The notes below the pieces were generated by a model, which saw only the letters and a list, made by a program, of their open reading frames with translations, did not search any database and was not told the origin of the DNA. A stretch of 64,000 nucleotides of DNA from Haplodiscus bocki (Eukaryota): NCBI GenBank assembly GCA_965655095.1, contig OZ296658.1, forward strand, positions 89,900,001 to 89,964,000, read 5' to 3'. The position numbers and the translations under genes were made by a program. Positions 5,832-64,000 of the stretch are shown in pieces; positions within the stretch are counted from its first letter, which is position 1; every line of letters begins with the position of its first letter.

Positions 5832-5836
5832 AAAAA

Positions 5837-9560: not shown

Positions 9561-9626
9561 CCGATTGCAAGTCAAGCTACTACTTCTGAAAACGGAAAAA
9601 ACCTAGATGAACAAAAGAGAACAAAT

Positions 9627-10053: not shown

Positions 10054-10319
10054 GATCAGAACAAAAATGAACAATGGCAGAAACAGGATGAAACACCAGT
10101 ACGCTCAGCATTGTGCACAGCACAACGACAAGATAATGCCTTGTCCCAAATCATTCAGTGGATCGAACGGGGAAAAGTGCCCATACCAAAAGAAGTGCAA
10201 GGACTTCCTCGGCTCGCATGGCAACTCAGCAATCAATTCAAAAGTTCACAACTCCTCGATGGAATTTTGTGCCGAAGATTTAAAACTGGAGATAGTGAAG
10301 AGGTATTACAACAAATAGT

Positions 10320-11883: not shown

Positions 11884-11979
11884 AATTCTCCGGATAGAAA
11901 AACGCGGAAACAGTCAAATGCCAATTTTACTAAAACTCCCACACAAAAGCGGAAGACACATCACACAAATAACACAGAT

Positions 11980-19000: not shown

Positions 19001-19199
19001 TTGCAAGTGATACGGTATCGATCCTTGCTTTTTGATTTTATTGCAGGATATCAGGGCTATAAATGTTGGACATCGAAGTTTTTAGTTTTTCGATTAGTTT
19101 TGATTATTGTTTCAGAATTTGATAATACTTTGTTTTTTTCTGATCGGTCGCTTCAGTCATTGATAATTTTTAGCGTCCAAGTAAACACTGAAAGCCAGT

Positions 19200-20440
19200 C
19201 AACAGCACAAAATGGCATGAAATTCATTCTTTTGGTGAATAAAAGGATAAGATTCTCTTTATTACACTCATTTTCAGCTTCTACTGCAATGTTTCCGAGA
19301 AAGTGTACCAAAATTTACTGGAAGTCTTGAAACTAGTTATTTACAGGCAATAGGTTCTTGTTCATTGTTATCTCTGATCCGGCGGTATCATTGCAACCAG
19401 TGATCATGTGTCGATAACAAGGTAATCAACGTTTCCGTCAATTTTAGGGTGATTCTCAAATGATTTCTTTTGACTGTCTAGGGTTTTGCATTCGGTTATT
19501 ACATTGATGGATCGGTCTTTGTCACTTCCTGTGTTAACTCCCACTTTGTTAAATATGATTTCTTGTGGCTTTGGTTGCTGAAATTTACATCATTTCACAG
19601 AATGTCTTTTTGTTTTAGATAGTGGCATTTCTACTCTCAGGCCCAGCATTTATGGTGAAAGTTCAAGTTCGATGCGTTACGATATAATCAAGTTCTGAAC
19701 CAAGAAGAAGATGTCTCCGTGTCATTCGTGCTCCGTAGTTTCCAGCGTTTTTTTCGTTTTGGTTTTTCGTCAATTTCTTTTTTGCTGAGATTATTGCATT
19801 AAGTTTCTTTAATTTATTTATGTCGTATGTAATCTATAAATGTTCGACAATTTTCAGCAAGCCTGGGTTTTTTTCTTTCATCAGTTCGGCCCGTAACATT
19901 TCATCGGTGATTGATGAAAAGAATTCAAAAAGGAGTATTTCGGTTTTTAAAAAAGTTGCGATAGTCTTACTCGTCCTGTAAATCTATCGGATTCTCCCCA
20001 TGTGTCTCAGATACTTCCGTATAAGGTTCTTTTGCTCAGTAGAAATCTCCTCGGGAATTGTAGTTTCTTACATCTTTTCCGGAATTTATCTTTTCAATAG
20101 TTGGCATCGGTCACATAATTTGATCAGTCTGTCCGTTTTAATTTTAACGGTTCTTTTCGGTATGCAGATCTTGTGCTTTCGTCTGTTGGTTGGCGTCCCA
20201 GTACTCAAAGAAAAAGTTGTTGTACCTCTCTTCTTTTGTGTTACAGCCTATTTCAATTATTGCTTCTTATTTGAACAACGATCTCAATTCTAAAATACAT
20301 TTTATCTTCGTGTACTGCTTCAATCTTTCCAACTCTTTCCGTGGTTCAAGTTTTTGTCCCACCTGTTCTCTTAAGCGAAGAGCGTATTCGAAAATTGCTT
20401 GCGGTCATGTTTTTCTACCACCTCGGTAAGGCTTTTTTGG
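19200..20440 (-). pseudogene. gag-protease of element B (progenitor copy; also present in every satellite unit)
   Basis: Protease-like LVIDT.SLVAMIPP at ~19425-19380. In array copies there is a zinc-knuckle remnant CHY..RKGHSAKTC and gag-like KYKSRRDFYRAKQPYTEIAETHWEKLMELE (ORF 39124-39306). Confidence 0.75.
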
Positions 20441-20477
20441 TAAAAGTCAAAGTATGAAAATCCTGCTGAGTGCTACA

Positions 20478-20683
20478 TGTTCCACCCTACGGTCAAAATT
20501 TCCAAGATAATCGGTGCAAAATTCTTTTCAAATGCATTAGCAGAGAATCAAAACTGTTATGATTACGGCACGGTCCTTCAAAAAAGATTCAAACAACAAT
20601 TCAAAATTTACTAATGTTTACAAAAATATTGTTCTTCGGTAAGAAGAATGATAAGGTTACGTAATCGGACAATCTGTATAGCA
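20478..20683 (-). repeat. 5' LTR of element B (206 bp), repeated once per satellite unit
   Basis: Minus strand TGCTATAC...GGAACA, collinear with 3339-3135 and followed directly by the PBS. Confidence 0.82.
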
Positions 20684-23600
20684 AAACTCGAAAATATTCG
20701 AAAAAGCAACCGTTCAAAACGCGGTTGAAGATTGAGATGGTTCTCGACATATCATTCAAAAGAATTTTCCCATTAATTTCGCTGTTTTTCTCCTTGTTGG
20801 TTCTTGGAAAAAAATTGCATGAGCGATTTTTTCGAGTCATCTTTGATTCCTTCATTTTCAGCTGACACTGCAATGTTTACAATCTTTCAACAAAGTTTTG
20901 CGGACATCTTGAGATCTGTTATTTACTGGTAATAGGTTTTGGTCATTCTGATCTCTGTATTTCGCGGTATCATTGTAACCAGTGATAATGTGTCGATAAC
21001 AAACTATTCTACGTTTCAGTCGATTTTAGGGTTATTGTCAATTGCAATTTTTTGACTGTCAAAGGTTTTGAATTCGGTTATTATATTGATCGATCTGTCT
21101 TTGAAACTGCGTGTTAACTCCCACTTCGCTAAATATGTCGATTTTTTGTGGCTTCCGTTGCTAAAATTTACATGTTTTTGCGGAGTGTCCTTTCCTTTTA
21201 TATAGTGGCATTTTTACTCTGAAGCCCGCATTTATGGTGAAAGTTCAAGTTCGATGCTTTACAATATGTTCCAATTCTAAACCAAGAAGAAAAAATCTTC
21301 GTGCCATTCGTGCTCCGTATCTTGTAGCATTCTTTTTCGTTTTGGTTTTTCGTCAATTTGTTTTTTGCTTAGATTATTGCATTAACTTCTATGTTCTAAG
21401 TTCAAGTTTTATTTTATTTTTGTCGTACGTCATCTATACGTCTTCGACAATTTTCGGCAAGTATAGGTCGTTTTCTTTCATCAGTTCGGCCCCTAACATT
21501 TTATCGGTGATTGATATAAATCTAAAAACGAGTATTTCGGTTTTTAAAAAATTTTGGATCGCATTTCTCTTCCTCTAATTCCATCAGCTTCTCCCAATGT
21601 GTCTCAGGTATTTCCGTATAAGGCTGTTTTGCTCAGTAGAAATCTTCTTGGGAATTGTATTTTCTTTCATTTTTTCCGGAATTTATCTTTTCAATAGGAG
21701 CCATCGGTTACATAGTTTGATCTGGCTGTCCGTTTTAATTTAAACGTTTCTATTCGGTATGCAGATCTTGTGCTTTGGTCTGTTGGTTGGGGTCCCAGTA
21801 CTCAAAGAAGCTGTTGTTGTACCTCTCTTCTTTTGTGTTACAGCCTGTTTCAATTATTGCTTCTTATTTGAACAACGATCTCAATTCTAAATTACATTTT
21901 ACCTTCGTGTACTGCTTCAATCTTTCCAACTCTTTCCGTGGTTCAAGTTTTTGTCCCACCTGTTCTCTTAAGCGAAGAGCGTATTCGAAAATTGCTTGCG
22001 GTCATGTTTTTCTACCACCTCGGTAAGGCTTTTTTGGTAAAAGTCAAAGTATGAAAATCCTGCTGAGTGCTACATGTTCCACCCTACGGTCAAAATTTCC
22101 AAGATATTCGGTGCAAAATTCTTTTCAAATGCATTAGCAGAGAATCAAAACTGTTATGATTACGGCACGGTCCTTCAAAAAAGATTCAAACAACAATTCA
22201 AAATTTACTAATGTTTACAAAAATATTGTTCTTCGGTAAGAAGAATGATAAGGTTACGTAATCGGACAATCTGTATAGCAAAACTCGAAAATATCCGAAA
22301 AAGCAACCGTTCAAAACGCGGTTGAAGATTGAGATGGTTCTCGACATATCATTCAAAAGAATTTTCCCATTAATTTCGCTGTTTTCCTCCTTGTTGGTTC
22401 TTGGAAAAAAATTGCATGAGCGATTTTTTCGAGTCATCTTTGATTCCTTCATTTTCAGCTGACACTGCAATGTTTACAATCTTTCAACAAAGTTTTGCGG
22501 ACATCTTGAGATCTGTTATTTACTGGTAATAGGTTTTGGTCATTCTGATCTCTGTATTTCGCGGTATCATTGTAACCAGTGATAATGTGTCGATAACAAA
22601 CTATTCTACGTTTCAGTCGATTTTAGGGTTATTGTCAATTGCAATTTTTTGACTGTCAAAGGTTTTGAATTCGGTTATTATATTGATCGATCTGTCTTTG
22701 AAACTGCGTGTTAACTCCCACTTCGCTAAATATGTCGATTTTTTGTGGCTTCCGTTGCTAAAATTTACATGTTTTTGCGGAGTGTCCTTTCCTTTTATAT
22801 AGTGGCATTTTTACTCTGAAGCCCGCATTTATGGTGAAAGTTCAAGTTCGATGCTTTACAATATGTTCCAATTCTAAACCAAGAAGAAAAAATCTTCGTG
22901 CCATTCGTGCTCCGTATTTTGTAGCATTCTTTTTCGTTTTGGTTTTTCGTCAATTTGTTTTTTGCTTAGATTATTGCATTAACTTCTATGTTCTAAGTTC
23001 AAGTTTTATTTTATTTTTGTCGTACGTCATCTATACGTCTTCGACAATTTTCGGCAAGTATAGGTCGTTTTCTTTCATCAGTTCGGCCCCTAACATTTTA
23101 TCGGTGATTGATATAAATCTAAAAACGAGTATTTCGGTTTTTAAAAAATTTTGGATCGCATTTCTCTTCCTCTAATTCCATCAGCTTCTCCCAATGTGTC
23201 TCAGGTATTTCCGTATAAGGCTGTTTTGCTCAGTAGAAATCTTCTTGGGAATTGTATTTTCTTTCATTTTTTCCGGAATTTATCTTTTCAATAGGAGCCA
23301 TCGGTTACATAGTTTGATCTGGCTGTCCGTTTTAATTTAAACGTTTCTATTCGGTATGCAGATCTTGTGCTTTGGTCTGTTGGTTGGGGTCCCAGTACTC
23401 AAAGAAGCTGTTGTTGTACCTCTCTTCTTTTGTGTTACAGCCTGTTTCAATTATTGCTTCTTATTTGAACAACGATCTCAATTCTAAAATACATTTTACC
23501 TTCGTGTACTGCTTCAATCTTTCCAACTCTTTCCGTGGTTCTAGTTTTTCTCCCATCTGTTCTGTTAAGCGAAGCACGTATCCGGATGTTTCCTCTGGTC

Positions 23601-26600
23601 ATGTTTTTCTACAACCTCCGTAAGGCTTTTTTTGGTAAAAGTCAAAGTATGAAAATCCTGCTGAGTGCCACATGTTCCACCCTACCGTCAAAATTTCAAA
23701 GGTATTCGGTGGAAAATTCTTTTCAAATGTATTAGCAGAGAATCAAAACTGTGATAATTACGGCACGGTCCTTCAAATAAGATTCAAACAACAATTCAAA
23801 ATTTACTAATGTTTACAAAAATATTGTTCTTCGGTAAGAAGAATGATAAGGTTACGTAATCGGACAATCTGTATAGCAAAACTCGAAAATATTCGAAAAA
23901 GCAACCGTTCAAAACGCGGTTGAAGATTGAGATGGTTCTCGACATATCATTCAAAAGAATTTTCCCATTAATTTCGCTGTTTTTCTCCTTGTTGGTTCTT
24001 GGAAAAAAATTGCATGAGCGATTTTTTCGAGTCATCTTTGATTCCTTCATTTTCAGCTGACACTGCAATGTTTACAATCTTTCAACAAAGTTTTGCGGAC
24101 ATCTTGAGATCTGTTATTTACTGGTAATAGGTTTTGGTCATTCTGATCTCTGTATTTCGCGGTATCATTGTAACCAGTGATAATGTGTCGATAACAAACT
24201 ATTCTACGTTTCAGTCGATTTTAGGGTTATTGTCAATTGCAATTTTTTGACTGTCAAAGGTTTTGAATTCGGTTATTATATTGATCGATCTGTCTTTGAA
24301 ACTGCGTGTTAACTCCCACTTCGCTAAATATGTCGATTTTTTGTGGCTTCCGTTGCTAAAATTTACATGTTTTTGCGGAGTGTCCTTTCCTTTTATATAG
24401 TGGCATTTTTACTCTGAAGCCCGCATTTATGGTGAAAGTTCAAGTTCGATGCTTTACAATATGTTCCAATTCTAAACCAAGAAGAAAAAATCTTCGTGCC
24501 ATTCGTGCTCCGTATCTTGTAGCATTCTTTTTCGTTTTGGTTTTTCGTCAATTTGTTTTTTGCTTAGATTATTGCATTAACTTCTATGTTCTAAGTTCAA
24601 GTTTTATTTTATTTTTGTCGTACGTCATCTATACGTCTTCGACAATTTTCGGCAAGTATAGGTCGTTTTCTTTCATCAGTTCGGCCCCTAACATTTTATC
24701 GGTGATTGATATAAATCTAAAAACGAGTATTTCGGTTTTTAAAAAATTTTGGATCGCATTTCTCTTCCTCTAATTCCATCAGCTTCTCCCAATGTGTCTC
24801 AGGTATTTCCGTATAAGGCTGTTTTGCTCAGTAGAAATCTTCTTGGGAATTGTATTTTCTTTCATTTTTTCCGGAATTTATCTTTTCAATAGGAGCCATC
24901 GGTTACATAGTTTGATCTGGCTGTCCGTTTTAATTTAAACGTTTCTATTCGGTATGCAGATCTTGTGCTTTGGTCTGTTGGTTGGGGTCCCAGTACTCAA
25001 AGAAGCTGTTGTTGTACCTCTCTTCTTTTGTGTTACAGCCTGTTTCAATTATTGCTTCTTATTTGAACAACGATCTCAATTCTAAATTACATTTTACCTT
25101 CGTGTACTGCTTCAATCTTTCCAACTCTTTCCGTGGTTCAAGTTTTTGTCCCACCTGTTCTCTTAAGCGAAGAGCGTATTCGAAAATTGCTTGCGGTCAT
25201 GTTTTTCTACCACCTCGGTAAGGCTTTTTTGGTAAAAGTCAAAGTATGAAAATCCTGCTGAGTGCTACATGTTCCACCCTACGGTCAAAATTTCCAAGAT
25301 ATTCGGTGCAAAATTCTTTTCAAATGCATTAGCAGAGAATCAAAACTGTTATGATTACGGCACGGTCCTTCAAAAAAGATTCAAACAACAATTCAAAATT
25401 TACTAATGTTTACAAAAATATTGTTCTTCGGTAAGAAGAATGATAAGGTTACGTAATCGGACAATCTGTATAGCAAAACTCGAAAATATTCGAAAAAGCA
25501 ACCGTTCAAAACGCGGTTGAAGATTGAGATGGTTCTCGACATATCATTCAAAAGAATTTTCCCATTAATTTCGCTGTTTTCCTCCTTGTTGGTTCTTGGA
25601 AAAAAATTGCATGAGCGATTTTTTCGAGTCATCTTTGATTCCTTCATTTTCAGCTGACACTGCAATGTTTACAATCTTTCAACAAAGTTTTGCGGACATC
25701 TTGAGATCTGTTATTTACTGGTAATAGGTTTTGGTCATTCTGATCTCTGTATTTCGCGGTATCATTGTAACCAGTGATAATGTGTCGATAACAAACTATT
25801 CTACGTTTCAGTCGATTTTAGGGTTATTGTCAATTGCAATTTTTTGACTGTCAAAGGTTTTGAATTCGGTTATTATATTGATCGATCTGTCTTTGAAACT
25901 GCGTGTTAACTCCCACTTCGCTAAATATGTCGATTTTTTGTGGCTTCCGTTGCTAAAATTTACATGTTTTTGCGGAGTGTCCTTTCCTTTTATATAGTGG
26001 CATTTTTACTCTGAAGCCCGCATTTATGGTGAAAGTTCAAGTTCGATGCTTTACAATATGTTCCAATTCTAAACCAAGAAGAAAAAATCTTCGTGCCATT
26101 CGTGCTCCGTATTTTGTAGCATTCTTTTTCGTTTTGGTTTTTCGTCAATTTGTTTTTTGCTTAGATTATTGCATTAACTTCTATGTTCTAAGTTCAAGTT
26201 TTATTTTATTTTTGTCGTACGTCATCTATACGTCTTCGACAATTTTCGGCAAGTATAGGTCGTTTTCTTTCATCAGTTCGGCCCCTAACATTTTATCGGT
26301 GATTGATATAAATCTAAAAACGAGTATTTCGGTTTTTAAAAAATTTTGGATCGCATTTCTCTTCCTCTAATTCCATCAGCTTCTCCCAATGTGTCTCAGG
26401 TATTTCCGTATAAGGCTGTTTTGCTCAGTAGAAATCTTCTTGGGAATTGTATTTTCTTTCATTTTTTCCGGAATTTATCTTTTCAATAGGAGCCATCGGT
26501 TACATAGTTTGATCTGGCTGTCCGTTTTAATTTAAACGTTTCTATTCGGTATGCAGATCTTGTGCTTTGGTCTGTTGGTTGGGGTCCCAGTACTCAAAGA

Positions 26601-26980
26601 AGCTGTTGTTGTACCTCTCTTCTTTTGTGTTACAGCCTGTTTCAATTATTGCTTCTTATTTGAACAACGATCTCAATTCTAAAATACATTTTACCTTCGT
26701 GTACTGCTTCAATCTTTCCAACTCTTTCCGTGGTTCTAGTTTTTCTCCCATCTGTTCTGTTAAGCGAAGCACGTATCCGGATGTTTCCTCTGGTCATGTT
26801 TTTCTACAACCTCCGTAAGGCTTTTTTTGGTAAAAGTCAAAGTATGAAAATCCTGCTGAGTGCCACATGTTCCACCCTACCGTCAAAATTTCAAAGGTAT
26901 TCGGTGGAAAATTCTTTTCAAATGTATTAGCAGAGAATCAAAACTGTGATAATTACGGCACGGTCCTTCAAATAAGATTC
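20590..26980. repeat. Dimeric higher-order repeat, 2 x 3195 bp
   Basis: Variants alternate with a 3195-bp period: APYLVA at 21234/24429 versus APYFVA at 22831/26026; KEKNS at 20601/23796 versus KEENS at 22198/25393; the ORFs at 23535 and 26730 are identical. Confidence 0.9.
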
Positions 26981-29900
26981 AAACAACAATTCAAAATTTA
27001 CTAATGTTTACAAAAATATTGTTCTTCGGTAAGAAGAATGATAAGGTTACGTAATCGGACAATCTGTATAGCAAAACTCGAAAATATTCGAAAAAGCAAC
27101 CGTTCAAAACGCGGTTGAAGATTGAGATGGTTCTCGACATATCATTCAAAAGAATTTTCCCATTAATTTCGCTGTTTTCCTCCTTGTTGGTTCTTAGAAA
27201 AAAATTGCAAGAGCGATTTTCTCGAATCATCTTTGATTCCTTCATTTTGAGCCACAACTGCAATGTTTCCAAGCTTTCAACAGAGTTTTTCGGACATCTT
27301 GAGATCTGTTATTTACTGGTAATGGGTTTTCGGCATTCTGATCTCTTTATCCCGCGGTATCATTGTAACGAGTGATATTGTGTCGAGAACAAATTATTCT
27401 ACAATTCCTCAACTTTAGGGTCATTGTCGATTGAATTCTTTTGCCTGTCGAAGGTTTTGAATTCGATTATTACATTGATCGATCTGTGTTTGACACTGTG
27501 CGTGTTAACTCCTAGTTCGCTAATTATGTTTATTTTTTGTGGCTTTCGTTGCTAAAGCTTACATGCTTCTGCGGAGTGGCCTTTCCTTTGAAATAGTGGC
27601 ATTTTTACTCTGAGGCCCGCATTTATGGTGAAAGTTCAAGTTCGATGCGTAACAAAATGTTCCAATTCCAAACCAAGAAAAAAAATCTTCATTTCATTCG
27701 TGCTCCGTATGTTCTAGCAATTTTTTTTCGTTTTGGTTTTTCGTCAATTTGTTTTTTGCTTAAATTATTGCATTAAGTTCTATGTTCTAAGTTCATTAAG
27801 TTTTATTTTATTTTTTGTCGTACGTAATCTATAAGTCTTCGAAAATTTTCGGCAAGTATAGGTTTTTTCTTTCATCAGTTCAGCCCCTAACATTTTATCG
27901 GTGATTGATATAAATCTAAAAACGAGTATTTCGGTTTTTAAAAAAGTTCGGATCGCCTTTCTCTTCCTCTAATTCCATCAGCTTCTCCCAATGTGTCTCA
28001 GGTATTTCTGTATAAGGTTGTTTTGCTCAGTAGAAATCTCCTCGAGAAGTGTATTTTCTTTCATCTTTTCCGGATATTATCTTTTCAATAGGAGGCATCG
28101 GTTACATAATTAGATCTGTCTGTCCGTTTTAATTTTAAACGGTTCTATTCGGTATGCCGATCTTGTGCTTTGGTGTGTTCGCTGGCGTCCCAGTACTCAA
28201 AGTAAGTGTTGTTGTGCCTCTCTTCTTTTGTGTTACAGCCTATTTCAATTATTGCTTCTTATTTGAACAACGATCTCCTTTCTAAATTACAATTTATCTT
28301 TGTCTACTGCTTCAATCTTTCCAACTATTGTCGGTGTTTCTAGCTTCTGTCTCATCTGTTCTCTTAAGCGAAGAGCGTATTCGAAAATTGCTTGCAGTCA
28401 TGTTTTTCTACCACCTCGGTAAGGCTTTTCCGGTAAAAGTCAAAGTATGAAAATCCTGCCCACTGCTCCATGTTCCACCCTACGGTCAAAATTTCAAAGG
28501 TATTCAGTGGAAAACTCTTTTCAAATGGGTTCACAGGGAATCAAAACTGTGATGGTTACGGCACGGTCCTTTAAATAAGAGTCAAACAACAATTCAAAGT
28601 TTACTAATGTTTACAAAAAAATTGTTCTTCGGTAAGAAGAATGATAAGGTTACGTAATCGTACAATCTGTATAGCAAAATTCGAAAATATTTGAAGAAGC
28701 AACCGTTCAAAACACGGATGAAGATTGCGCTGGTTCTCTTCATATAATTCAAAAGAATTTTCCCATTAAATTGTCTGATTTCCTTCTTGTTGGATCTTGG
28801 AAAGAGATTGCATGAGCGATTTTTTCGAATCAACTTTGACTCCTTCATTTTCAGCTGCAACTTCAATGTTTCCAATCTTTCAACAAAGTTTTGTGGACAA
28901 CTGGAGATCTGTTATTTACTGGTAATAGGTTTTAGTCTTTCTGATCTCTTTATTCCGCGGTATCATTGTAACCAGTGATAATGTGTCGATAACAAATTAT
29001 TCTACGTTTCCGTCAATTTTAGGGCCAATGTCAATTGAATTCTTGTGACGGTCGAAGGATTTGAATTCCGTTATTACATTGATCGATCTGTCTTTGGCAC
29101 TGTGCGTGTTAACTCCTACTTCGCTAAATATGTTGATTTTTTTGTGGCTTTCGTTGCTAAAGCTTACATGCTTTTGCGGAGTGGCCTTACCCTTTGACAT
29201 AGTGGCATTTTTACTCTGAGGCCCGCAATAATGGTGAAAGTTCAAGTTCGATGCGTAACAATATGTTCGAATTCCAAACCAAGAAGAAAAAATCTTCGTG
29301 TCATTAGTGCTCCGTATTTTCTAGCATTTTTTTTCCTTTTCGTTTTTCGTCAATTTCTTTTATTGCTTAGATTATTGCATTAAGTTCTATGTTCTAAGTT
29401 CATTAGGTTTTATTTTTTCTGTCGTACGTAATCTATAACTCTTCGACAATTTTTGGCAAGTGTATGTCGTTTTCTTTCATCAGTTCGGCCGCTAACATTT
29501 CATCGGTGATTGATATAAATCTAAAAACGAATATTTCGGTTTTTAAAAAAGCTTGGATCGCCTTTCTCTTCCTCTAACTCCATCAGCTTCTCCCAATGTG
29601 TCTCAGCTATTTCTGTATAAGGTTGTTTTGCTCAGTAGAAATCTCCACGAGAAGTGTATTTTCTTTCATCTTTTCCGGGTATTATCTTTTCAATAGGAGG
29701 CATCGGTTACATAATTAGATCTGTCTGTCCGTTTTAATTTTAAACGGTTCTATTCGGTATGCCGATCTTGTGCTTTGGTGTGTTCGTTGGCGTCCCAGTA
29801 CTCAAAGAAAGTGTTGTTGTACCTCTCTTCTTTTGTGTTATAGCCTGTTTCAACTATTGCTTCTTATTTGAACAACGATCTCCTTTCTAAATTACAATTT

Positions 29901-52457: not shown

Positions 52458-52476
52458 AATCCCGCCGACTGCTCCA
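52458..52476 (-). promoter_or_regulatory. tRNA-Ser-type PBS of element B (well-preserved copy; the progenitor position is 20459-20477)
   Basis: TGGAGCAGTCGGCGGGATT here, and TGGAGCAGTCAGCAGGATT in most units. It abuts the LTR's terminal CA and resembles the tRNA-Ser PBS TGGCG(C/T)AGTCGG(C/T)AGGATT. Confidence 0.75.
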
Positions 52477-55400
52477 TGTTCCACCCTACGGTCAAAATTT
52501 GAAAGGTATTCAGTGGAAAATTCTTTTCAAATGGGTTCACAGGGAATAAAAACTGTGATGATTACGGCACGGTCCTTTAAATAAGAGTCAAACAACAATT
52601 CAAAGTTTACTAATGTTTACAAATTTATTGCTTTTCGGTAAGAAGAATGATAAGGTTACGTAATCGGACAATCTGTATAGCAAAACTCGAGAATATTTGG
52701 AAAAACAACCGTTCAAAACGCGGACGAACACATTGAGCTGGTTCTCATCATATCATTGAAAAGAATTTTCCCATTAATTTGGCTGTTTTCTTTCCTGTTG
52801 GTTCTTAGAAAAAAATGCAAGAGCGATTTTTTCGAGTCATTTTTGATTCCTTAATTTTTCAGCTAAAACTGCAATGTTTCCAATCTTTCAACAGAGTTTT
52901 GCGGACATCTTGAGATCTGTTATTTACTGGTAATGGGTTTTGGGCATTGTGATCTCTTTATCCCGCGGTATCATTGTAACGAGTAATAATGTGTCGAAAA
53001 CAAATTATTCTACGTTTCAGTCGATTTTAGGGTCATTGTCAATTGAACTTTTTCGCCTGTCAAAGGTTTTGAATTGAGTTATTACATTGATCGATGTCTT
53101 TGAAACTGTGCGTCTAAACTCCTATTTCGCTAAATATGTTGATTTTTTGTGGCTTCCGTTGCTAAAATTTACATGTTTTTGCGGAGTGTCCTTTCCTTTT
53201 ATGTAGTGGCAATTTTACTCTGAAGCCGCATTCATGGAGAGAGTTCAAGTTCGAGCCGTTACAATATGTTCAAATTCTAAACCAAGAAGAGAAAAGTCTT
53301 CGTGTCATTCGTGCTCCGCATTGTCTAGCATTTTTTTTCGTTCTGGTTTTTCGTCAATATCTTTTCTGCTTGGATTGTTGCATTAAGTTCTGTTATTTTA
53401 TATCTGTCGTACGTAATCTACAATTGTTCGACAATTTTCGGCAAGTGTAGGTCGTTTTCTTTCATCAGTTCGGCCCCTAAAATTTTATCGGTGATTGAGG
53501 ACATAAATCTTAAGACGAGTATTTCGGTTTTTAAAAAAGTATGGACCGCCTTTCTCTTCCTCCAATTCCATCAGCTTCTCCCAATGTGTCTAAGGTTCTT
53601 CCGCATAAAGCTGTTTTGTTCAGTAGAAATCTCCTTGGGAATTGTATTTTCTTTCATTTTCTCCGGAATTTATCTTTTCAATAAGAGGCATCGGTTACAT
53701 AATTTGATCTGTCTGTCCGTTTTAATTTCAAACGGTTCTTTTCGGTATGCCGATCTTCTCCTTTGGTGTGTTGATTGGGGTCCCAGTACTCAAAGAAAGT
53801 GTTGTTGTACCTCTCTTCTTTTGTGTTATAGCTTGTTTCAATTATAGCTACTTATTTGAACAACCATCTCATTTCTAAAGTACATTTTGCCTTTGTGTAC
53901 TGCTTCAATCTTTCCAACTAATGTCGGTGGTTCTAGTTTTTGTCCCATCTGTTCTCTTAAGCGAAGCACGTATTCGAATATTTCCTCCGGTCATGTTTTC
54001 TTACCACCTCGGTAAGGTTTTTCGCGTAAAAGTCAAAGTATGAAAATCCTGCTGACTGCTCCATGTTCCACCCTACGGTCAAAATTTCAAAGGCAATCGG
54101 TGGCAAATTCTTATCAAAATGATTCGCAGAGAATCAAAACTGTGATGGTTACGGGAGGGTTCAATAAGTAAAAGTCAAACAACAATTCAAAGTTAACTAA
54201 TGTTTACAAAAATATTGTTCTTCGGTAATAAGAATGATAAGGTTACGTAATCGCAAAATCTGTATAGCAAAACTCGAAAATATTTGAAAAAGCAACCGTT
54301 CAAAACGCGGATGAACAGATTGAACTGGTTCTCGGCATATCATTCAATAGAATTTTCCCATTAATTTGGCTGTTTTCCTCCTTGTTGGTTCTTAGAAAAA
54401 ATTGCAGGAGCGATTTTTTCGAGTCATCTTTGATTCCTTAATTTTTCAGCTACAACTCCAATGCTTCCAATCTTTCAACAAAGTTTTGCGGACATCTTGA
54501 GATCTGTTATTTACTGGTAATGGGTTTTGGGCATTCTGATCTCTTTATCCCGCGGTATCATTGTAACGAGTGATAATGTGTCGATAACAAATTATTCTAC
54601 GTTTCAGTCGATTCTAGGGTCATCGTCAATTGAAACTAATTGACTGTCAAAGGTATTGAATTCAGTTGTTACATTGATCGATGTCTTTGAAACTGTGCGT
54701 GTTAAATCCTATTTCGCTAAAAATGTTGACTTTTTGTGGCTTCCGTTGCTAAAATTTACATGTTTTTGCGGAGTGTCCTTTCGTTTTATATAGTGGCCTT
54801 TTTACTCTGAAGCCCGCATTGATGGTGAAAGTTCAAGTTCGATCCGTTACAATATGTTCCAATTCTGAACCAAAAAAAAATAAATCTTCGTGTCATTCGT
54901 ACTCCGTATTTTCTAGCATTTTTTCTACTTTTCGTTTTTCGTCAATTTCTTTTTTTGCTCAGATTATTGCATTAAGTTCTATGTTCTAAGTTCATTAAGT
55001 TTTATTTTAATTTTGTCGTACGTAATCTATAACTCGTCGACAATTTTCGGCAAGTGTAGGTCATTTTCTTTCATCAGTTCGGCCCCTAATATTTTATCGG
55101 TGATTGATATAAATCTAAAAACGAGTATTGCGGTTTTTAAAAAAGTTTGGATCGCCTTTCTCTTCCTCTAATTCCATCAGCTTCTCCCAATGTGTCTCAG
55201 GTATTTCCGCATAAAGCTGTTTTCCTCAGTAGAAATCTCGTTGGGAATTTTATTTTCTTTCATCTTTTCCGGAATTTATCTTTTCAATAGGAGCCATCGG
55301 TTACATAATTTGATCTGTCTGTCCGTTTTAATTTAAACGGTTCTGTTCGGTATGCAGATCTTGTGCTTTGGTCTGTTGGTTGGGGTCCCAGTACTCAAAG

Positions 55401-58400
55401 AAAATTTTGTTGAACCTCTCTTCCTTTGTGTTACAGCCTGTTTCAATTATTGCTTCTTATTTGAACGACGATCTCAATTCGAAATTACATTTTATCTTTG
55501 TGTACTGCTTCAATCTTTCCAACTATTGTCGGTGTTTCTAGTTTTTGTCCCATCTGTTCTCTTAGGCGAAGCACGTATTCGGATATTCCCTCCGGTCATG
55601 TTTTCCTACCACCTCGGTGAGGCTTTTCGCGTAAAAGTCAAAGTATGAAAATCCTGCTGACTGCTCCATGTTCCACCCTACGGTCGAAATTTCAAAGGCA
55701 ATCGGTGGCAAATTCTTATCAAAATGATTCACAGAGAATCAAAACTGTGATGGTTACGGGACGGTTCAATAAGTAAAAGTCAAACAACAATTCAAAGTTA
55801 ACTAATGTTTACAAAAATATTGTTCTTCGGTAAGAAGAATGATAAGGTTACGTAATCGCAAAATCTGTATAGCAAAACTCGAAAATATTTGAAAAAGCAA
55901 CCGTTCAAAACGCGGATGAACAGATTGAACTGGTTCTCGGCATATCATTCAATAGAATTTTCCCATTAATTTGGCTGTTTTCCTCCTTGTTGGTTCTTAG
56001 AAAAAATTGCAGGAGCGATTTTTTCGAGTCATCTTTGATTCCTTAATTTTTCAGCTACAACTGCAATGCTTCCAATCTTTCAACAAAGTTTTGCGGACAT
56101 CTTGAGATCTGTTATTTACTGGTAATAGGTTTTGGGCATTGTGATCTCTTTATCCCGCGGTATCATTGTAACGAGTGACAATGTGTCGAAAACAAATTAT
56201 TCTACGTTTCAGTCGATTTTAGGGTCATCGTCAATTGAAATTAATTGACTGTCAAAGGTTTTGAATTGAGTTATTACATTGATCGATGTCTTTGCAACTG
56301 TGCGTCTTAACTCCTATTTCGCTAAATATGTTGATTTTTTGTGGCTTCCGTTGCTAAAATTTACATGTTTTTGCGGAGTGTCCTTTCGTTTTATATAGTG
56401 GCCTTTTTACTCTGAAGCCCGCATTGATGGTGAAAGTTCAAGTTCGATCCGTTACAATATGTTCCAATTCTGAACCAAAAAAAAAATAAATCTTCGTGTC
56501 ATTCGTACTCCGTATTTTCTAGCATTTTTTCTACTTTTCGTTTTTCGTCAATTTCTTTTTTTGCTCAGATTATTGCATTAAGTTCTATGTTCTAAGTTCA
56601 TTAAGTTTTATTTTAATTTTGTCGTACGTAATCTATAACTCGTCGACAATTTTCGGCAAGTGTAGGTCATTTTCTTTCATCAGTTCGGCCCCTAATATTT
56701 TATCGGTGATTGATATAAATCTAAAAACGAGTATTGCGGTTTTTAAAAAAGTTTGGATCGCCTTTCTCTTCCTCTAATTCCATCAGCTTCTCCCAATGTG
56801 TCTCAGGTATTTCCGCATAAAGCTGTTTTCCTCAGTAGAAATCTCGTTGGGAATTTTATTTTCTTTCATCTTTTCCGGAATTTATCTTTTCAATAGGAGC
56901 CATCGGTTACATAATTTGATCTGTCTGTCCGTTTTAATTTAAACGGTTCTGTTCGGTATGCAGATCTTGTGCTTTGGTCTGTTGGTTGGGGTCCCAGTAC
57001 TCAAAGAAAATTTTGTTGAACCTCTCTTCCTTTGTGTTACAGCCTGTTTCAATTATTGCTTCTTATTTGAACGACGATCTCAATTCGAAATTACATTTTA
57101 TCTTTGTGTACTGCTTCAATCTTTCCAACTATTGTCGGTGTTTCTAGTTTTTGTCCCATCTGTTCTCTTAGGCGAAGCACGTATTCGAATATTTCCTCCG
57201 GTCATGTTTTCCTACCACCTCGGTGAGGCTTTTCGCGTAAAAGTCAAAGTATGAAAATCCTGCTGACTGCTCCATGTTCCACCCTACGGTCGAAATTTCA
57301 AAGGCAATCGGTGGCAAATTCTTACCAAAATGATTCACAGAGAATCAAAACTGTGATGGTTACGGGACGGTTCAATAAGTAAAAGTCAAACAACAATTCA
57401 AAGTTAACTAATGTTTACAAAAATATTGTTCTTCGGTAAGAAGAATGATAAGGTTACGTAATCGCAAAATCTGTATAGCAAAACTCGAAAATATTTGAAA
57501 AAGCAACCGTTCAAAACGCGGATGAACAGATTGAACTGGTTCTCGGCATATCATTCAATAGAATTTTCCCATTAATTTGGCTGTTTTCCTCCTTGTTGGT
57601 TCTTAGAAAAAATTGCAGGAGCGATTTTTTCGAGTCATCTTTGATTCCTTAATTTTTCAGCTACAACTGCAATGCTTCCAATCTTTCAACAAAGTTTTGC
57701 GGACATCTTGAGATCTGTTATTTACTGGTAATGGGTTTTGGGCATTCTGATCTCTTTATCCCGCGGTATCATTGTAACGAGTGATAATGTGTCGATAACA
57801 AATTATTCTACGTTTCAGTCGATTCTAGGGTCATCGTCAATTGAAACTAATTGACTGTCAAAGGTATTGAATTCAGTTGTTACATTGATCGATGTCTTTG
57901 AAACTGTGCGTGTTAAATCCTATTTCGCTAAAAATGTTGACTTTTTGTGGCTTCCGTTGCTAAAATTTACATGTTTTTGCGGAGTGTCCTTTCGTTTTAT
58001 ATAGTGGCCTTTTTACTCTGAAGCCCGCATTGATGGTGAAAGTTCAAGTTCGATCCGTTACAATATGTTCCAATTCTGAACCAAAAAAAAAATAAATCTT
58101 CGTGTCATTCGTACTCCGTATTTTCTAGCATTTTTTCTACTTTTCGTTTTTCGTCAATTTCTTTTTTTGCTCAGATTATTGCATTAAGTTCTATGTTCTA
58201 AGTTCATTAAGTTTTATTTTAATTTTGTCGTACGTAATCTATAACTCGTCGACAATTTTCGGCAAGTGTAGGTCATTTTCTTTCATCAGTTCGGCCCCTA
58301 ATATTTTATCGGTGATTGATATAAATCTAAAAACGAGTACTGCGGTTTTTAAAAAAGTTTGGATCGCCTTTCTCTTCCTCTAATTCCATCAGCTTCTCCC

Positions 58401-61400
58401 AATGTGTCTCAGGTATTTCCGCATAAAGCTGTTTTCCTCAGTAGAAATCTCGTTGGGAATTTTATTTTCTTTCATCTTTTCCGGAATTTATCTTTTCAAT
58501 AGGAGCCAACGGTTACATAATTTGATCTGTCTGTCCGTTTTAATTTAAACGGTTCTGTTCGGTATGCAGATCTTGTGCTTTGGTCTGTTGGTTGGGGTCC
58601 CAGTACTCAAAGAAAATTTTGTTGAACCTCTCTTCCTTTGTGTTACAGCCTGTTTCAATTATTGCTTCTTATTTGAACGACGATCTCAATTCGAAATTAC
58701 ATTTTATCTTTGTGTACTGCTTCAATCTTTCCAACTATTGTCGGTGTTTCTAGTTTTTGTCCCATCTGTTCTCTTAGGCGAAGCACGTATTCGGATATTC
58801 CCTCCGCTCATGTTTTTCTACCACATCGGTAAGGCTTTTTCGGTAAAAGTCAAAATCCCGCCGACTGCTCCATGTTCCACCCTACGGTCAGAATTTCAAA
58901 GGTATTCAGTGGAAAATTCTTTTCAAATGGGTTCACAGCGAATAAAAACTGTGATGATTACGGCACGGTCCTTTAAATAAGAGTCAAACAACAATTCGAA
59001 GTTTACTAATGTTTACAAAATTATTGCTTTTCGGTAAGAAGAATGATAAATTTACGTAATCGGACAACCTGTATAGCAAAACTCGAAAATATTTGAAAAA
59101 ACAACCGTTCAAAACGCGAATGAACACATTGAGCTGGTTCTCGTCATATCATTCAAAAGAATTTCCCCATCAAATTGGCTGTTTTCCTCCTTGTTGGTTC
59201 TTAGAAAAAAATGCATGAGCGATTTTTTCGAATCGCTTTGATTCCTTAATTTTTCAGCTACAACTGCAATGTTTCCAATCTTTCAACAAAGTTTTGCGGA
59301 CATCTTGAGATCTGTTATTTACTGGTAATGGGTTTTGGGCATTCTGATCTCTTTATCCCGCGGTAACATTTTAACGAGTGATAATGTGTCGATAACAAAT
59401 TATTCTACGTTTCAGTCGATTTTAGGGTCATCGTCAATTGAAATTAATTGACTGTCAAAGGTTTTCAACTGAGTTTTTACAATGATCGATGTCTTTGAAA
59501 CTGTGCGTCTCAAGTCCTATTTCGCTAAATATGTTGATTTTTTGTCGCTTCCGTTGCTAAAATTTACATGTTTTTGCGGAGTGTCCTTTCCTTTTATATA
59601 GTGGCATTTTTACTCTGCAGCCCGCATTCATAGTGAAAGTTCAAGTTCGATCCGTTACAATATGTTCAAATTCTAAACCAAGAAGAAAACAGTCTTCCTG
59701 TCATTCGTGCTCCGCATTGTCTAGCATTTTTTTTCCTTTTGGTCCTTCGTCAATATCTTTTCTGCTGGGAGTGTTGCATTAAGTTCTGTTATTTTATATC
59801 TGTCGTACGTAATCTACAATTGTTCGATAATTTTCGGCAAGTGTAGGTCGTTTTCTTTCATCAGTTGGGCCCCTAAAATTTTATCGAAGATTGAGGATAT
59901 AAATCTAAAGACGGGAATTTCGGTTTTTAAAAAAGTTTGGATCGCCTTTCTCTTCCTCTAATTCCATCAGCTTCTCCCAATGTGTCTCAGGTTCTTCCGT
60001 ATAAGGCTGTTTTGCTCAGTAATCTCTTCGGGATTTGTATTTTCTTTCATCTTTTCCGGAAATTATCTTTTCAAAAAGAGGCATCGGTTACATAACTTGA
60101 TCTTTCAGTACGCTTTAATTTCAAACGGTTCTTTTCGGTATGCCGATCTGGTGCTTTGGTGTGTTGATTAGGGTCCCAGTACTCAAAGAAAGTGTTGTTG
60201 TACCTCTCTTCTTTTGTGTTATAGCCTGTTTCAACTATTGCTTCTTATTAGAACAACGATCTCATTTCTAATTTACATTTTATCTTTGTGTACTGCTTCA
60301 ATCTTTCCAACTATTGTCGGTGTTTCTAGCTTTTGTCCCATCTGTTCTCTTAAGCGAAGCACGTATTCGAATATTTCCTCCGGTCATGTTTTCCTACCAC
60401 CTTGGTAAGGCTTTTTGCGTAAAAGTCAAAGTACGAAAATCCTGCTGTCTGCTCCATATTCCACCCTACGGTCAAAACTTCAAAGGTATTCAGTGGAAAA
60501 TTCTTTTCAAATAGGTTCACAGGGAATCAAAACTGTGATGATTACGGCACGGTCCTTTAAATAAGAGTCAAACAACAATTCAAAGTTGACTAATGTTTAC
60601 AAAATTATTGTTTTTCGGTAAGAAGAATGATAAGGTTACCTAATCGCACAACCTGTATAGCAGAACTCGAAATTATTTGAAAAAGCGACCTTTCAAAACG
60701 CGGATGAACAGATTGAACTGGTTCTCGACATATCATTCAAAAGAATTTTCCCATTAATTTGGCTGTTTTCCTCCTTGTTGGTTCTTAAAAAAATTGCATG
60801 AGCGATTTTTTCGAGTCATTTTTGATTCCTTCATTTTCAGCTGCAACTGCAATGTTTACAATCTTTCAACAAAGTTTTGCGGACATCTTGAGATCTGTTA
60901 TTTACTGGTAATAAATTTTGGTCATTCAGATCTCCTCATCCCGCGGTATCATTGTAACCAGTGACAATGTGTCGAAAACAAATTATTCTACGTTTCAGTC
61001 GATTTTAGGGTCATTGTCAATTGATTTTTTTCGCCTGTCAAAGGTTTTGAATTCAGTTATCACATTGATCGATGTCTTTGAAACTGTGCGTGTTAACTCC
61101 TACTTCGCTACATATGTTGATTTTTTGTGGCTTTCGTTGCTTAAATTTACATGTTTTTGCGGAGTGTCCTTTCCTTTAGAAAGTGGCATTTTTACTCTGA
61201 AGCCCGCATTTATGGTGAAAGTTCAAGTTCGATCCGTTACAATATGTTCAAATTCTAAACGAAGAAGAAAAAATCATCGTGTCATTCGTGCTCCGTATTT
61301 TCTAGCATTTTTTTCCTTTCCGTTTTTCGTCAATTTCTTTTTTGCTTGGATTGTTGCATTAAGTTCTGTTGTTTTTTATCTGTCGTACGTAATCTACAAT

Positions 61401-64000
61401 TGTTCGACAATTTTCGGCAAGTGTAGGTCGTTCTCTTCCATCAGTTCGGCCCCTAAAAATTTATCGGTGATTGAGGATATAAATCTAAAGACGAGTATTT
61501 CGGTTTTTAAAAAAGTTTGGATCGCCTTTCTCTTCCTCTAATTCCATCAGCTTCTCCCAACGTGTCTCAGGTTCTTCCGTATAAGGCTGTTTCGCTCAGT
61601 AGAAATCTCTTCGGGATTTGTATTTTCTTTCATCTTTTCCGGAAATTATCTTTTCAATAAGAGGCATCGGTTACGTAATTTGATCTGTCTGTCCGTTTCA
61701 ATTTCAAACGGTACTTTTCGGTATGCCGATCTTGTGCTTTGGTGTGTTGATTGGGGTCCCAGTACTCTAAGAAAGTGTTGTTGTACCTCTATTCTTTTAA
61801 GTTATAGCCTGTTTCAATTATTGCTTCTTATTAGAACAACTATCTCATTTCTAAAGTACATTTTGCCTTTGTGTACTGCTTCAATCTTTCCAACTAATGT
61901 CGCTGGTTCTAGTTTTTGTCCCATCTGTTCTCTTAAGCGAAGCACGTATTCGAATATTTCCTCCGGTCATGTTTTCCTACCACCTCGATAAGGATTTTTC
62001 GGTAAAAGTCAAAGTAAGAAAATCCTGCTGACTGCTCCATGTTCCACCCTACGGTCAAAACTTCAAAGGTATTCAGTGGAAAATTCTTTTCAAATGGGTT
62101 CACAGAGAATCAAAACTGTGATGATTACGGCACGGTACTTTAAATAAGAGTCAAACAACAATTCAATGTTAACTAATGTTTACAAAATTATTGTTTCTCG
62201 GTAAGAAGAATGATAGGGTTACGTAATCGGACAATCTGTATAGCAAAACTCGAGAATATTTGAAAAAGCAACCGTTCAAAACGAGGGTGAACAGATTGAA
62301 CTGGTTCTCGACATATCATTCAAAAGAATTTTCCCATTAATTTGGCTGTTTTCCTCCTTGTTGGTTCTTAAAAAAATTGCATGATCGATTTTTTCGAGTC
62401 ATCTTTGATTCCTTCATTTTCAGCTGCAACTGCAATGTCTAAAGTTGTTCAACAAAGTTTTGCGGACATCTTGAGATCTGTTATTTACTGGTAATGGGTT
62501 TTGGGCATTGTGATCTCTTTATCCCGCGGTATCATTGTAACGAGTGATAATGTGTCGATAACAAATTATTCTACATTTCAGTCGATTTTAGGGTCTTTGT
62601 CAATTGAACTTTTTGACTGTCAAAGGTTTTGAATTCTGTTATCACATTGATCGATGTCTTTGAAACTGTGCGTGTTAACTCCTACTTCGCTAAATATGTT
62701 GATTTTTTGTGGCTTTCGTTGCTTAAATTTACATGTTTTTGCGGAGTGTCCTTTCCTTTAGAAAGTGGCATTTTTACTCTGAAGCCCGCATTTATGGTGA
62801 AAGTTCAAGTTCGATCCGTTACAATATGTTCAAATTCTAAACCAAAAAGAAAAAATCTTCGTGTCATTCGTGCTCCGTATTTTCTAGCATTTTTTTCCTT
62901 TCCGTTTTTCTTCAATTTCATCTTTGCTTGGATTGTTGCATTAAGTTCTGTTATTTTATATCTGTCGTACGTAATCTACAATTGTTCGACAATATTCGGC
63001 AAGTGTAGGTCGTTTTCTTTCATGAGTTCGGCCCCTAAAATTTTATCGGTGATTGAGGATATAAATCTAAAGACGAGTATTTCAGTTTTTAAAAAAGTTT
63101 GGATCGCCTTTCTTTTCCTCTAATTCCATCAGCTTCTCCCAATGTGTCTCAGGTTCTTCCATATAAGGCTGTTTTGCTCACTAGAAATCTCTTCGGGATT
63201 TGTATTTTCTTTCATCTTTTCCGGAATTTATCTTTTCAATAGGAGCCATCGGTTATATAATTTGATCTGTCTGTCCGGTTTAATTTCAAACGGTTCTTTT
63301 CGGTATGCCGATCTTGTGCTTTGGTATGTTGATTGGGGTCCCAGTACTCAAAGAAAGTGTTGTTGTACCTCTTCTTTTGTGTTATAGCCTGTTTCAATTA
63401 TTGCTTCTTATTAGAACAACTATCTCATTTCTAAAGTACATTTTGCCTTTGTGTACTGCTTCAATCTTTCCAACTATTGTCGCTGGTTCTAGTTTTTGTC
63501 CCATCTGTTCTCTTAAGCGAAGCACGTATTCGAATATTTCCTCCGGTCATGTTTTCCTACCACCTCGATAAGGATTTTTCGGTAAAAGTCAAAGTATGAA
63601 AATCCTGCTGACTGCTCCATGTTCCACCCTACGGTCGAAACTTCAAAGGTATTCAGTGGAAAATTCTTTTCAAATAGGTTCACAGGGAATCAAAACTGTG
63701 ATGAATACGGCACGGTACTTTAAATAAGAGTCAAACAACAATTCAAAGTTTAGTAATGTTTATTGTTTATTAGTAAAAATTATTGTTTTTCGGTAAGAAG
63801 AATGATAGGGTTACGTAATCGGACAATCTGTATAGCAAAACTCGAGAATATTTGAAAAAGCAACCGTTCAAAACGAGGGTGAACAGATTGAACTGGTTCT
63901 CGACATATCATTCAAAAGAATTTTCCCATTAATTTGGCTGTTTTCCTCCTTGTTGGTTCTTAAAAAAATTGCATGATCGATTTTTTCGAGTCATCTTTGA

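What the first reader, a model, noticed from the sequence alone, without database searches (positions are those of the whole stretch)
19256..64000. Satellite array born from the 5' junction of an LTR retrotransposon, with the progenitor still attached
Seen: each 1.6-kb unit is ~155 bp of non-element flank + 206-bp LTR + PBS + gag + protease N-half. The first unit runs without a break into the rest of element B (RT, RNase H, IN), and its partner 3' LTR lies at 3135-3339. The unit junction falls inside the protease. The unit therefore did not arise by LTR-LTR recombination but by duplication of a segment straddling the insertion boundary, and it has amplified to at least 45 kb. Established: TE-derived satellites exist and can be centromeric. 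Inference: this is the array's point of origin, which allows its ancestry to be reconstructed directly.
Basis: partly seen in the sequence, partly recalled or inferred. Interest (0 to 1): 0.8.

Follow-up and report, generated by a model that had tools for sequence, protein, structure and literature searches.

The report
Tandem array from retrotransposon-host junction
A 1.6-kb piece of DNA spanning the edge of a dead Gypsy-type jumping gene and about 150 bases of its host DNA was copied head to tail 34 times in place. The rest of the element is still attached, which makes this a very clean but ordinary example of how mobile elements seed satellite-like repeats.

Summary
A head-to-tail array of exactly 34 units of about 1,597 bp runs from window 19268 to 9.5 kb past the window end, 54.25 kb in all.

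On the minus strand each unit contains, in order:
- 151-168 bp of host DNA
- a 206-bp TG..CA LTR
- an 18-nt primer-binding site
- a decayed gag region
- the protease N-half, with an active-site remnant V-I-D-T

Unit 1 continues without a break into the protease C-half (DWL motif), RT (YIDD) and RNase H. It then passes through a nested env-bearing Gypsy element (4397-16155) to a polypurine tract and the partner LTR at 3135-3339. Integrase could not be shown.

Four paralogous "empty sites" elsewhere in the genome show that the unit's flank and the DNA beyond the 3' LTR were once contiguous, inside an older interspersed repeat. The flank is therefore host DNA, and the two LTRs belong to one insertion.

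The unit-to-unit junction occurs only at this locus in the 1.5-Gb assembly. Both array edges show divergence gradients, as expected from in-place unequal exchange.

However, this is a single-locus array of tens of copies, not a genome-wide or demonstrably centromeric satellite. TE-derived tandem arrays are a published kind. This scan had already found similar single-locus arrays made of retrotransposon pieces on other DNA of this same genome.

The parts
2850..3134 (-). Host DNA just beyond element B's 3' LTR. It is part of an older interspersed repeat, here called R.
   Evidence: It matches R copies elsewhere at 66-74% identity. In four of those copies it lies 0-13 bp from the sequence homologous to the array unit's flank.
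3135..3339 (-). 3' LTR of element B (205 bp, TG..CA)
   Evidence: It aligns to the LTR of every unit at 67-73% identity, K2P mean 0.39. The empty-site test ties it to the 5' flank.
3340..3362 (-). Polypurine tract abutting the 3' LTR
   Evidence: A 23-nt tract with 22 purines lies directly 5' of the LTR's TG in sense orientation.
3363..4396 (-). 3' remainder of element B's internal region, decayed, with no recognisable domain
   Evidence: Assigned by its position between nested element A and the polypurine tract. Pfam finds nothing in its pieces.
4397..16155 (+). Element A, a younger env-bearing Gypsy-type element nested inside B
   Evidence: Its 1.44-kb LTRs (4397-5833 and 14713-16155) have K2P 0.092. 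tblastn with polyproteins from this genome gives Gypsy pol hits at 8447-10998 and env hits at 13121-13697.
16156..19267 (-). Single-copy internal part of element B: protease C-half, RT, RNase H and a decayed stretch where integrase should lie
   Evidence: Motifs: AVDWL at 19192-19206, YIDD at 18320-18331, IAFASR at 17810-17827 and ELEIIAV at 17758-17778. The piece at 17774-17881 hits Pfam RT_RNaseH_2 at E = 1.1e-3. There are weak colinear tblastn hits to Gypsy RT. DNA relatives elsewhere carry Gypsy RT/RH.
19268..20851 (-). Unit 1 of the array, the unit attached to B and the most divergent one
   Evidence: It is 83-89% identical to the other units. Divergence rises from 0.01-0.09 at the flank to 0.39 at the protease end. 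Short-read contigs from two samples bridge 17800-19551.
19401..19418 (-). Protease active-site remnant: V-I-D-T-stop-S in unit 1, V-I-D-T-L-S in unit 2 at the matching position
   Evidence: It lies 360 codons upstream of YIDD. The corresponding spacing in an intact Gypsy polyprotein of the same genome is 349 codons.
20460..20477 (-). Primer-binding site (unit 1 copy)
   Evidence: It starts directly after the LTR's CA. The form seen in the four other units aligned is 17/18 complementary to the 3' end, plus CCA, of tRNA-like sequences in this genome. A pattern for that tRNA 3' end gives 426 hits at up to 2 mismatches and 0 in the reversed control.
20478..20683 (-). 5' LTR copy in unit 1 (206 bp, TG..CA)
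20684..20834 (-). Host flank carried in every unit (151 bp of repeat R)
   Evidence: It is homologous to the far-end flank and to R copies elsewhere. No polypurine tract lies next to the LTR.
20835..20851 (-). Junction zone of 17 nt between the protease-derived end of one unit and the R-derived start of the next, of ambiguous origin
   Evidence: Alignment A2 and coordinates. Microhomology of 3-5 bp is possible but cannot be established.
20852..64000 (-). Units 2 to 28 (unit 28 is cut by the window end). The array continues to unit 34, ending 9,519 bp beyond the window.
   Evidence: Blocks of near-identical units exist: u2-u5, u15/u17-u20, u23-u25 and u27-u30.

Best explanation
An old Ty3/Gypsy-type LTR retrotransposon (element B, minus strand, about 5.8 kb) inserted into a copy of an older interspersed repeat (R).

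Later, a tandem duplication by illegitimate joining copied one segment. Its upstream breakpoint lay about 150 bp before B's 5' LTR, inside R. Its downstream breakpoint lay in the middle of the protease coding region. At most a few bases of microhomology were involved.

Once two copies existed, unequal exchange and gene conversion between misaligned units expanded the segment in place to 34 copies (54 kb). These processes kept the inner units alike, at K about 0.08-0.11 with blocks at 98-100% identity. The outermost half-units, which cannot be exchanged, drifted apart.

The rest of B stayed single-copy downstream of the array: the protease C-half, RT, RNase H, a decayed 3' part and the 3' LTR. 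It was later split by a younger env-bearing Gypsy element.

Shown here: the anatomy, the host origin of the flank, the pairing of the LTRs, the uniqueness of the junction and the edge gradients.

Inferred: the joining mechanism of the first duplication, unequal exchange as the means of expansion, and the relative timing. The first duplication is dated at K up to 0.39, as old within error as the insertion (LTR-LTR K 0.39). Both are about four times older than element A (K 0.09).

The array is most likely non-functional decaying DNA.
For: - Array: 34 integral units with their boundaries.
- LTR homology, primer-binding site and polypurine tract.
- Protease motifs on either side of the junction, then RT and RNase H.
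- A relative on C1 has a gag-like and an RT-like part in the same order at similar spacing, 1,418 against 1,643 bp.
- Four paralogous empty sites join the flank to the DNA beyond the 3' LTR.
- The far-end unit leaves through the flank into the remainder of R.
- The junction 30-mer is found only in this array in the whole assembly.
- No array-like relatives were found elsewhere.
- Divergence gradients at both edges and blocks of near-identical inner units.
- Short-read contigs from two samples bridge the boundary between the array and B. Their k-mer depth over the array is roughly 10-45 times that over B's single-copy part.
Against: - Gag is not confirmed by homology. Only a weak GH-A-C remnant was found.
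- Integrase was not found.
- The RNase H hit is below Pfam's curated cut-off. RT and protease rest on short motifs and weak tblastn hits at E about 0.04.
- A target-site duplication cannot be read.
- The two edge estimates for the age of the first duplication differ twofold, 0.39 against 0.19-0.21.
- The genome DNA search skips very common words and did not return the array itself, so absence of diverged arrays elsewhere is not fully proven.
- The depth figures come from contigs and are not a proper copy number.
Confidence: 0.85

Rival explanations
1. The array is a concatemer of an internally deleted element that grew by unequal recombination between LTRs (LTR-internal-LTR-internal...). On this reading the '155-bp flank' is the 3' end of the element's internal region.
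For: This is the commonest published route to tandem LTR elements (PMC12628747, PMC3648361). Each unit contains exactly one LTR.
Against: - The stretch before each unit LTR has no polypurine tract, whereas the true 3' LTR has one.
- That stretch shows no similarity to 3340-3500.
- It is homologous to an interspersed repeat whose copies continue straight into the DNA found beyond B's 3' LTR.
- The far end of the array starts with the flank, not with an LTR.
Confidence: 0.02
2. The first duplication happened as described, but expansion was by rolling-circle replication of an excised circular copy, or by replication re-initiation or template switching, rather than by unequal exchange.
For: An integral number of units with one uniform junction fits any of these. 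The same genome holds other arrays of 1.2-1.6-kb units with 14-34 copies, which could hint at a shared mechanism.
Against: - Gradients of divergence run inwards from both edges.
- Near-identical units occur in nested blocks, including a two-unit block (u2,u3 = u4,u5). Both features are the classic signature of repeated local unequal exchange and conversion over a long time.
- A single burst would give a star-like pattern.
Confidence: 0.08
3. The array, or its size, is an assembly artefact: a mis-joined or over-expanded repeat.
For: Long tandem repeats are hard to assemble. All four sequencing runs come from one study and may include the assembly's own sample.
Against: - The units differ by up to 17% and form structured blocks, so they are not copies of one read.
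- Short-read contigs from two samples cross the boundary between the array and B.
- Contig k-mer depth over the array is roughly 10-45 times that of the neighbouring single-copy DNA, in line with tens of copies.
Confidence: 0.03

Closest known systems
CRM1TR and CRM4TR tandem repeats of maize (Sharma, Wolfgruber and Presting 2013, PMC3648361)
   Same: These are local tandem arrays derived from a Ty3/Gypsy element, with a unit that includes LTR sequence plus adjoining internal sequence. They are thought to start by illegitimate recombination and grow by conversion or exchange. They are dated with nested younger retrotransposons and homogenised locus by locus.
   Different: The maize units are entirely element-derived (LTR plus UTR, joined UTR~LTR). 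Here the unit also carries about 150 bp of host DNA, gag and half of the protease, so the founding event was a segmental duplication across the insertion boundary. Here the single-copy remainder of the parent element is also still attached.
Sobo satellite of Solanum bulbocastanum (Tek et al. 2005, as described in PMC8091179 and PMC9659126)
   Same: It has a long compound monomer (4.7 kb) made of part of an LTR retrotransposon plus other genomic sequence.
   Different: Sobo monomers are up to 99% alike (PMC8091179). From my own recollection, Sobo is a large array of hundreds of kilobases, its progenitor locus with the rest of the element is not preserved, and it sits at a single locus. I could not read the original paper. 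Here the array is old, decayed and only 54 kb.
Tandem TE arrays formed by double insertion or by recombination between LTRs (McGurk and Barbash model, as summarised in PMC12628747)
   Same: A tandem dimer involving a TE serves as the substrate for expansion by unequal exchange.
   Different: Those models give units made of TE sequence only, sharing one LTR or a target-site duplication. Here each unit contains 151-168 bp of host repeat and ends inside the protease, which neither model produces.
Other single-locus arrays made of retrotransposon pieces in this same genome (earlier scan notes s1-356388 and s1-362052)
   Same: Units of 1.2-1.5 kb cut from decayed Gypsy or Copia elements were copied 14-32 times in place at one locus.
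   Different: Those units are internal coding pieces. This unit spans the boundary between element and host, which allows the empty-site proof. I did not re-examine those loci.

Membership tests
Ty3/Gypsy LTR retrotransposon (element B) | Two direct LTRs with TG..CA ends bounding one insertion | tested here: met
   The LTRs are 206 and 205 bp and 67-73% identical. Four paralogous empty sites join the two outer flanks.
Ty3/Gypsy LTR retrotransposon (element B) | Primer-binding site after the 5' LTR and polypurine tract before the 3' LTR | tested here: met
   The PBS is 17/18 complementary to the 3' end of tRNA-like sequences in this genome. A 23-nt purine tract lies at 3340-3362.
Ty3/Gypsy LTR retrotransposon (element B) | Domain order protease - RT - RNase H - integrase | tested here: inconclusive
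   Protease motifs (DT-, DWL), RT YIDD and RNase H occur in that order, with 360 codons from protease to RT. That spacing leaves no room for an integrase between them, as a Copia-type order would need. RNase H scores E = 1.1e-3, below the curated cut-off. Integrase was not detected.
Ty3/Gypsy LTR retrotransposon (element B) | Target-site duplication of 4-6 bp | tested here: inconclusive
   The bases flanking the two LTRs do not match convincingly. At about 30% divergence this is not informative.
Retrotransposon-derived tandem repeat | Head-to-tail units whose sequence is homologous to parts of a retrotransposon | tested here: met
   There are 34 units. Each has LTR homology to B's 3' LTR, a PBS and a protease remnant, and unit 1 is continuous with pol.
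Satellite DNA in the strict sense | High copy number in long arrays, usually at several loci or forming a cytological block | tested here: not met
   The junction 30-mer occurs only in this one 54-kb array. Contig k-mer depth suggests tens of copies, not thousands. No similar arrays were found elsewhere.
Centromeric satellite | Association with centromeric histone or the primary constriction | not testable with these tools
   No chromatin or cytological data were available. The array lies 1.85 Mb from the end of a 91.8-Mb contig, which proves nothing.
LTR-LTR recombination concatemer of an LTR element | Units consist of element sequence only, with the internal region's 3' end and polypurine tract before each LTR | tested here: not met
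   Host repeat R precedes each unit LTR, and there is no purine tract.

The most novel reading that the evidence does not exclude
The array may be one instance of a genome-specific process that preferentially turns segments of about 1.2-1.6 kb, often in dead retrotransposons, into arrays of 14-34 copies at single loci. Earlier scan notes record several such arrays in this genome. Here the first duplication is, within error, as old as the insertion itself (K about 0.39 for both). That could mean the founding duplication arose during repair around a fresh integration rather than at a random later time.
Probability: 0.1. Interest if true: 0.6.

Novelty: new member of a known kind. Interest (0 to 1): 0.33.

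Why it matters
Tandem repeats born from transposable elements are well documented, but the founding event is usually erased. At this locus every component survives: the host repeat that was hit, both LTRs, the duplicated segment with its junction, the single-copy remainder of the element, and a younger nested element that serves as a clock.

The locus is therefore a good textbook case, and a possible test bed for models of array growth such as edge gradients and block duplications. It does not reveal a new mechanism or a function. Similar arrays occur elsewhere in the same genome.

Tried and rejected
- Tandem Repeats Finder found nothing because its longest period is 500 bp. BLAST was used instead.
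- Pfam on stop-free pieces of the unit and of B gave nothing apart from one sub-threshold RNase H hit. Pfam on pieces of distant relatives also gave nothing.
- tblastn with intact Gypsy, BEL-like and LINE proteins from this genome detected element A clearly. On B it gave only weak colinear RT hits.
- A feature search of the ESM Atlas with a 96-aa gag-position piece returned only noise, scores 0.81 and below.
- The word-based protein search was not used because the stop-free pieces are far shorter than any polyprotein and fall outside its length window. The large profile search was not used because the cost was not justified for such short decayed pieces.
One target was the pair of LTR matches 5 kb apart on C7. 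The question of whether intact family members contain the flank was answered indirectly by the empty-site test.
- A second protease-like motif, FDSGN at 18854-18868, was considered as the real active site. It was rejected because it lies only about 180 codons before YIDD, too close for a protease-to-RT spacing.
- Microhomology at the founding junction was examined, with a possible AGAAT. It cannot be established at this level of divergence.
Full report
**Observation.**
Self-comparison shows a head-to-tail array with a period of about 1,597 bp. It starts at window 19268 and runs to the window end. Tandem Repeats Finder missed it only because its longest period is 500 bp.

The window is G000:C11:89,900,001-89,964,000 in a 1.5-Gb assembly. 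I fetched the next 120 kb and found that the array ends 9,519 bp beyond the window. It comprises exactly 34 units, 19268 to 73519 in extended coordinates, or 54.25 kb.

Inner units are 88-100% identical. Blocks of near-identical neighbours exist: u2-u5 (including a two-unit repeat), u15/u17-u20, u23-u25 and u27-u30. Unit 1, next to the single-copy DNA, is the most divergent at 83-89%.

**Anatomy of the unit and of element B.**
The sense strand is the minus strand. It is A-rich, and all motifs read on it.

*LTR.* A 205-bp stretch at 3135-3339 aligns with a 206-bp stretch in every unit. Both have TG..CA ends. Identity is 67-73%, with K2P mean 0.39 and range 0.34-0.45.

*Polypurine tract.* In sense orientation the 3135-3339 copy is directly preceded by a 23-nt purine-rich tract at 3340-3362. 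The unit copies are preceded by T-rich DNA with no such tract.

*Primer-binding site.* Directly after each unit LTR comes an 18-nt site beginning TGG. A search for the tRNA T-arm plus acceptor strand that it implies found 426 sites in this genome at up to two mismatches. The reversed control found none. The best matches differ only at the discriminator base, which gives 17/18 complementarity.

*Gag region.* About 1.1 kb follows that I take to be decayed gag. The evidence is its position, a weak GH-A-C remnant of a zinc knuckle, and 65-76% DNA similarity to the same region of dispersed relatives. No profile or feature search recognises it.

*Protease.* Near the unit's 3' end every copy reads V-I-D-T followed by a lost glycine codon. 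In unit 1 this lies at 19418-19401. Sixty-odd codons further on, already in single-copy DNA, comes A-V-D-W-L at 19206-19192, the usual C-terminal protease motif.

*RT and RNase H.* Next come F-Y-I-D-D-I-I-V (YIDD at 18331-18320) and an RNase H piece at 17881-17774. That piece matches Pfam RT_RNaseH_2 at E = 1.1e-3, below the curated cut-off.

*Spacing and family.* The protease D lies 360 codons before YIDD. In an intact Gypsy polyprotein of this genome the spacing is 349 codons. DNA relatives of this stretch elsewhere carry Gypsy RT/RNase H. One relative on C1 has the gag-like and RT-like parts in the same order at similar spacing.

*Integrase.* I could not show it.

*Nested element and size.* Between 16155 and 4397 lies a younger, plus-strand, env-bearing Gypsy element. 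Its 1.44-kb LTRs have K2P 0.092. Without it, element B measures about 5.8 kb.

**The junction.**
Homology between unit 1 and the other units ends at 19268. In the other units the corresponding point is followed by a 17-nt zone of ambiguous origin and then by the flank.

The flank is 151-168 bp long.

**Is the flank host DNA, and is 3135-3339 the partner LTR?**
This was the key test. I searched the genome with two queries: the far-end flank plus the DNA upstream of it, and the DNA just beyond the 3' LTR.

Both belong to one older interspersed repeat, R. In four copies of R the two homologous stretches lie on the same strand only 0-13 bp apart:
- C9:51,978,563-51,979,117
- C2:39,707,567-39,708,140
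- C3:110,339,371-110,339,944
- C12:58,245,772-58,246,262

These are paralogous empty sites. Everything between the flank and 3134 is one insertion into R, the flank is R and not part of B, and the two LTRs are partners.

**Locus of origin.**
- The far-end unit begins within a few bases of the start of the flank and continues upstream into the rest of R. The near end continues into pol.
- The 30-mer across the unit-to-unit junction, with up to three mismatches, occurs 30 times in the whole assembly, and all 30 are in this array.
- Similarity searches with whole units found only scattered, single, 65-79% identical LTR or gag fragments elsewhere. A caveat applies: that tool skips very common words and did not return the array itself.

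**Support from reads.**
Short-read contigs from four runs (two samples, one study) cross 17800-19551, spanning the boundary at 19268. Their k-mer depth over the array is roughly 10-45 times the depth over B's single-copy part.

That agrees with tens of copies and argues against a hidden large satellite. Contig depth is not, however, a proper copy number.

**How it grew.**
Divergence of unit 1 from the inner units rises steadily towards pol. K2P is 0.09 in the flank (0.01 against unit 2), 0.12 in the LTR, 0.14 and 0.22 in gag, and 0.39 in the protease end.

Unit 34 shows the mirror image, 0.19 in its outer flank falling to inner-unit values of 0.08-0.11.

This is what repeated unequal exchange and conversion predict. 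An exchange can replace the array-side part of an edge unit but never the part next to unique DNA.

The oldest segment dates the first duplication at K up to 0.39. Within error that is as old as the insertion (LTR-LTR 0.39) and about four times older than the nested element (0.09). The far edge gives a lower bound of about 0.2.

Both unit 1 and the other units have lost the active-site glycine codon through a shared first-base change. Element B was therefore probably already dead when it was duplicated. This last point is inference.

**Rivals.**
- An LTR-LTR concatemer of a deleted element is excluded by the host origin of the flank, the missing purine tract and the far-end structure.
- An assembly artefact is unlikely given the structured variation between units and the bridging contigs.
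- Rolling-circle or replication-based amplification cannot be excluded for individual steps, but it does not explain the edge gradients.

**Comparison with what is known.**
Reviews list satellites derived from LTR, gag or pol segments of LTR retrotransposons and the proposed mechanisms (PMC12628747, PMC9659126).

The closest worked example is CRM1TR/CRM4TR of maize. These are locally homogenised LTR-UTR arrays, started by illegitimate recombination and dated with nested elements (PMC3648361).

Compound monomers that combine part of an LTR element with other genomic sequence are known from Sobo (PMC8091179).

What is special here is that the unit spans the element-host boundary and that all the pieces of the founding locus are preserved.

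Earlier notes of this scan record other single-locus arrays made of retrotransposon pieces in this same genome, and follow-up judged them ordinary. I did not re-examine them.

**Verdict.**
The kind is known: this is a new member of a known kind, of modest interest.

It is not a satellite in the strict sense, and nothing points to a centromeric role.

Noticed in passing
window 4397-16155: A younger env-bearing Gypsy-type element is nested in B. It has 1.44-kb LTRs (K2P 0.092), pol at 8447-10998 and env at 13121-13697. Earlier notes on this window concern its pol and env.
   Followed up: partly
window 18854-18868 (minus strand): A second protease-like motif (V-x-V-x-L-x-N-G-K..F-D-S-G-N) lies about 180 codons downstream of the real active-site remnant, between protease and RT. 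It is too close to YIDD to be the protease. It may be chance or a relic of an internal duplication.
   Followed up: partly
L032-L033 (C11:89,988,482-90,000,047, beyond the window): A large inverted repeat with arms of about 4.4 kb, 98-99.7% identical, around a spacer of about 3 kb, lies some 15 kb past the far end of the array.
   Followed up: no
G000:C1:26,316,966-26,455,271 (coordinates only): Hundreds of tRNA-like 3' ends matching the element's primer-binding site are spaced about 460 or 930 bp apart. This is a large tandem tRNA-like array. The tRNA's identity was not determined.
   Followed up: no
window 2523-2800: This stretch belongs to another, more abundant interspersed repeat (over 250 first-look candidates at 70-80% identity), distinct from repeat R that received element B.
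   Followed up: no
window 17800-19551: Contigs from runs X2, X3 and X4 differ from the window at 10-15 sites in this stretch, while X1 is identical. This suggests two haplotypes of the locus within one sample and between samples.
   Followed up: no
G000:C7:17,951,443-17,956,569 (coordinates only): Two matches to the unit's LTR lie on the same strand about 5.0 kb apart. This may be a full-length member of element B's family. It could not be fetched.
   Followed up: no
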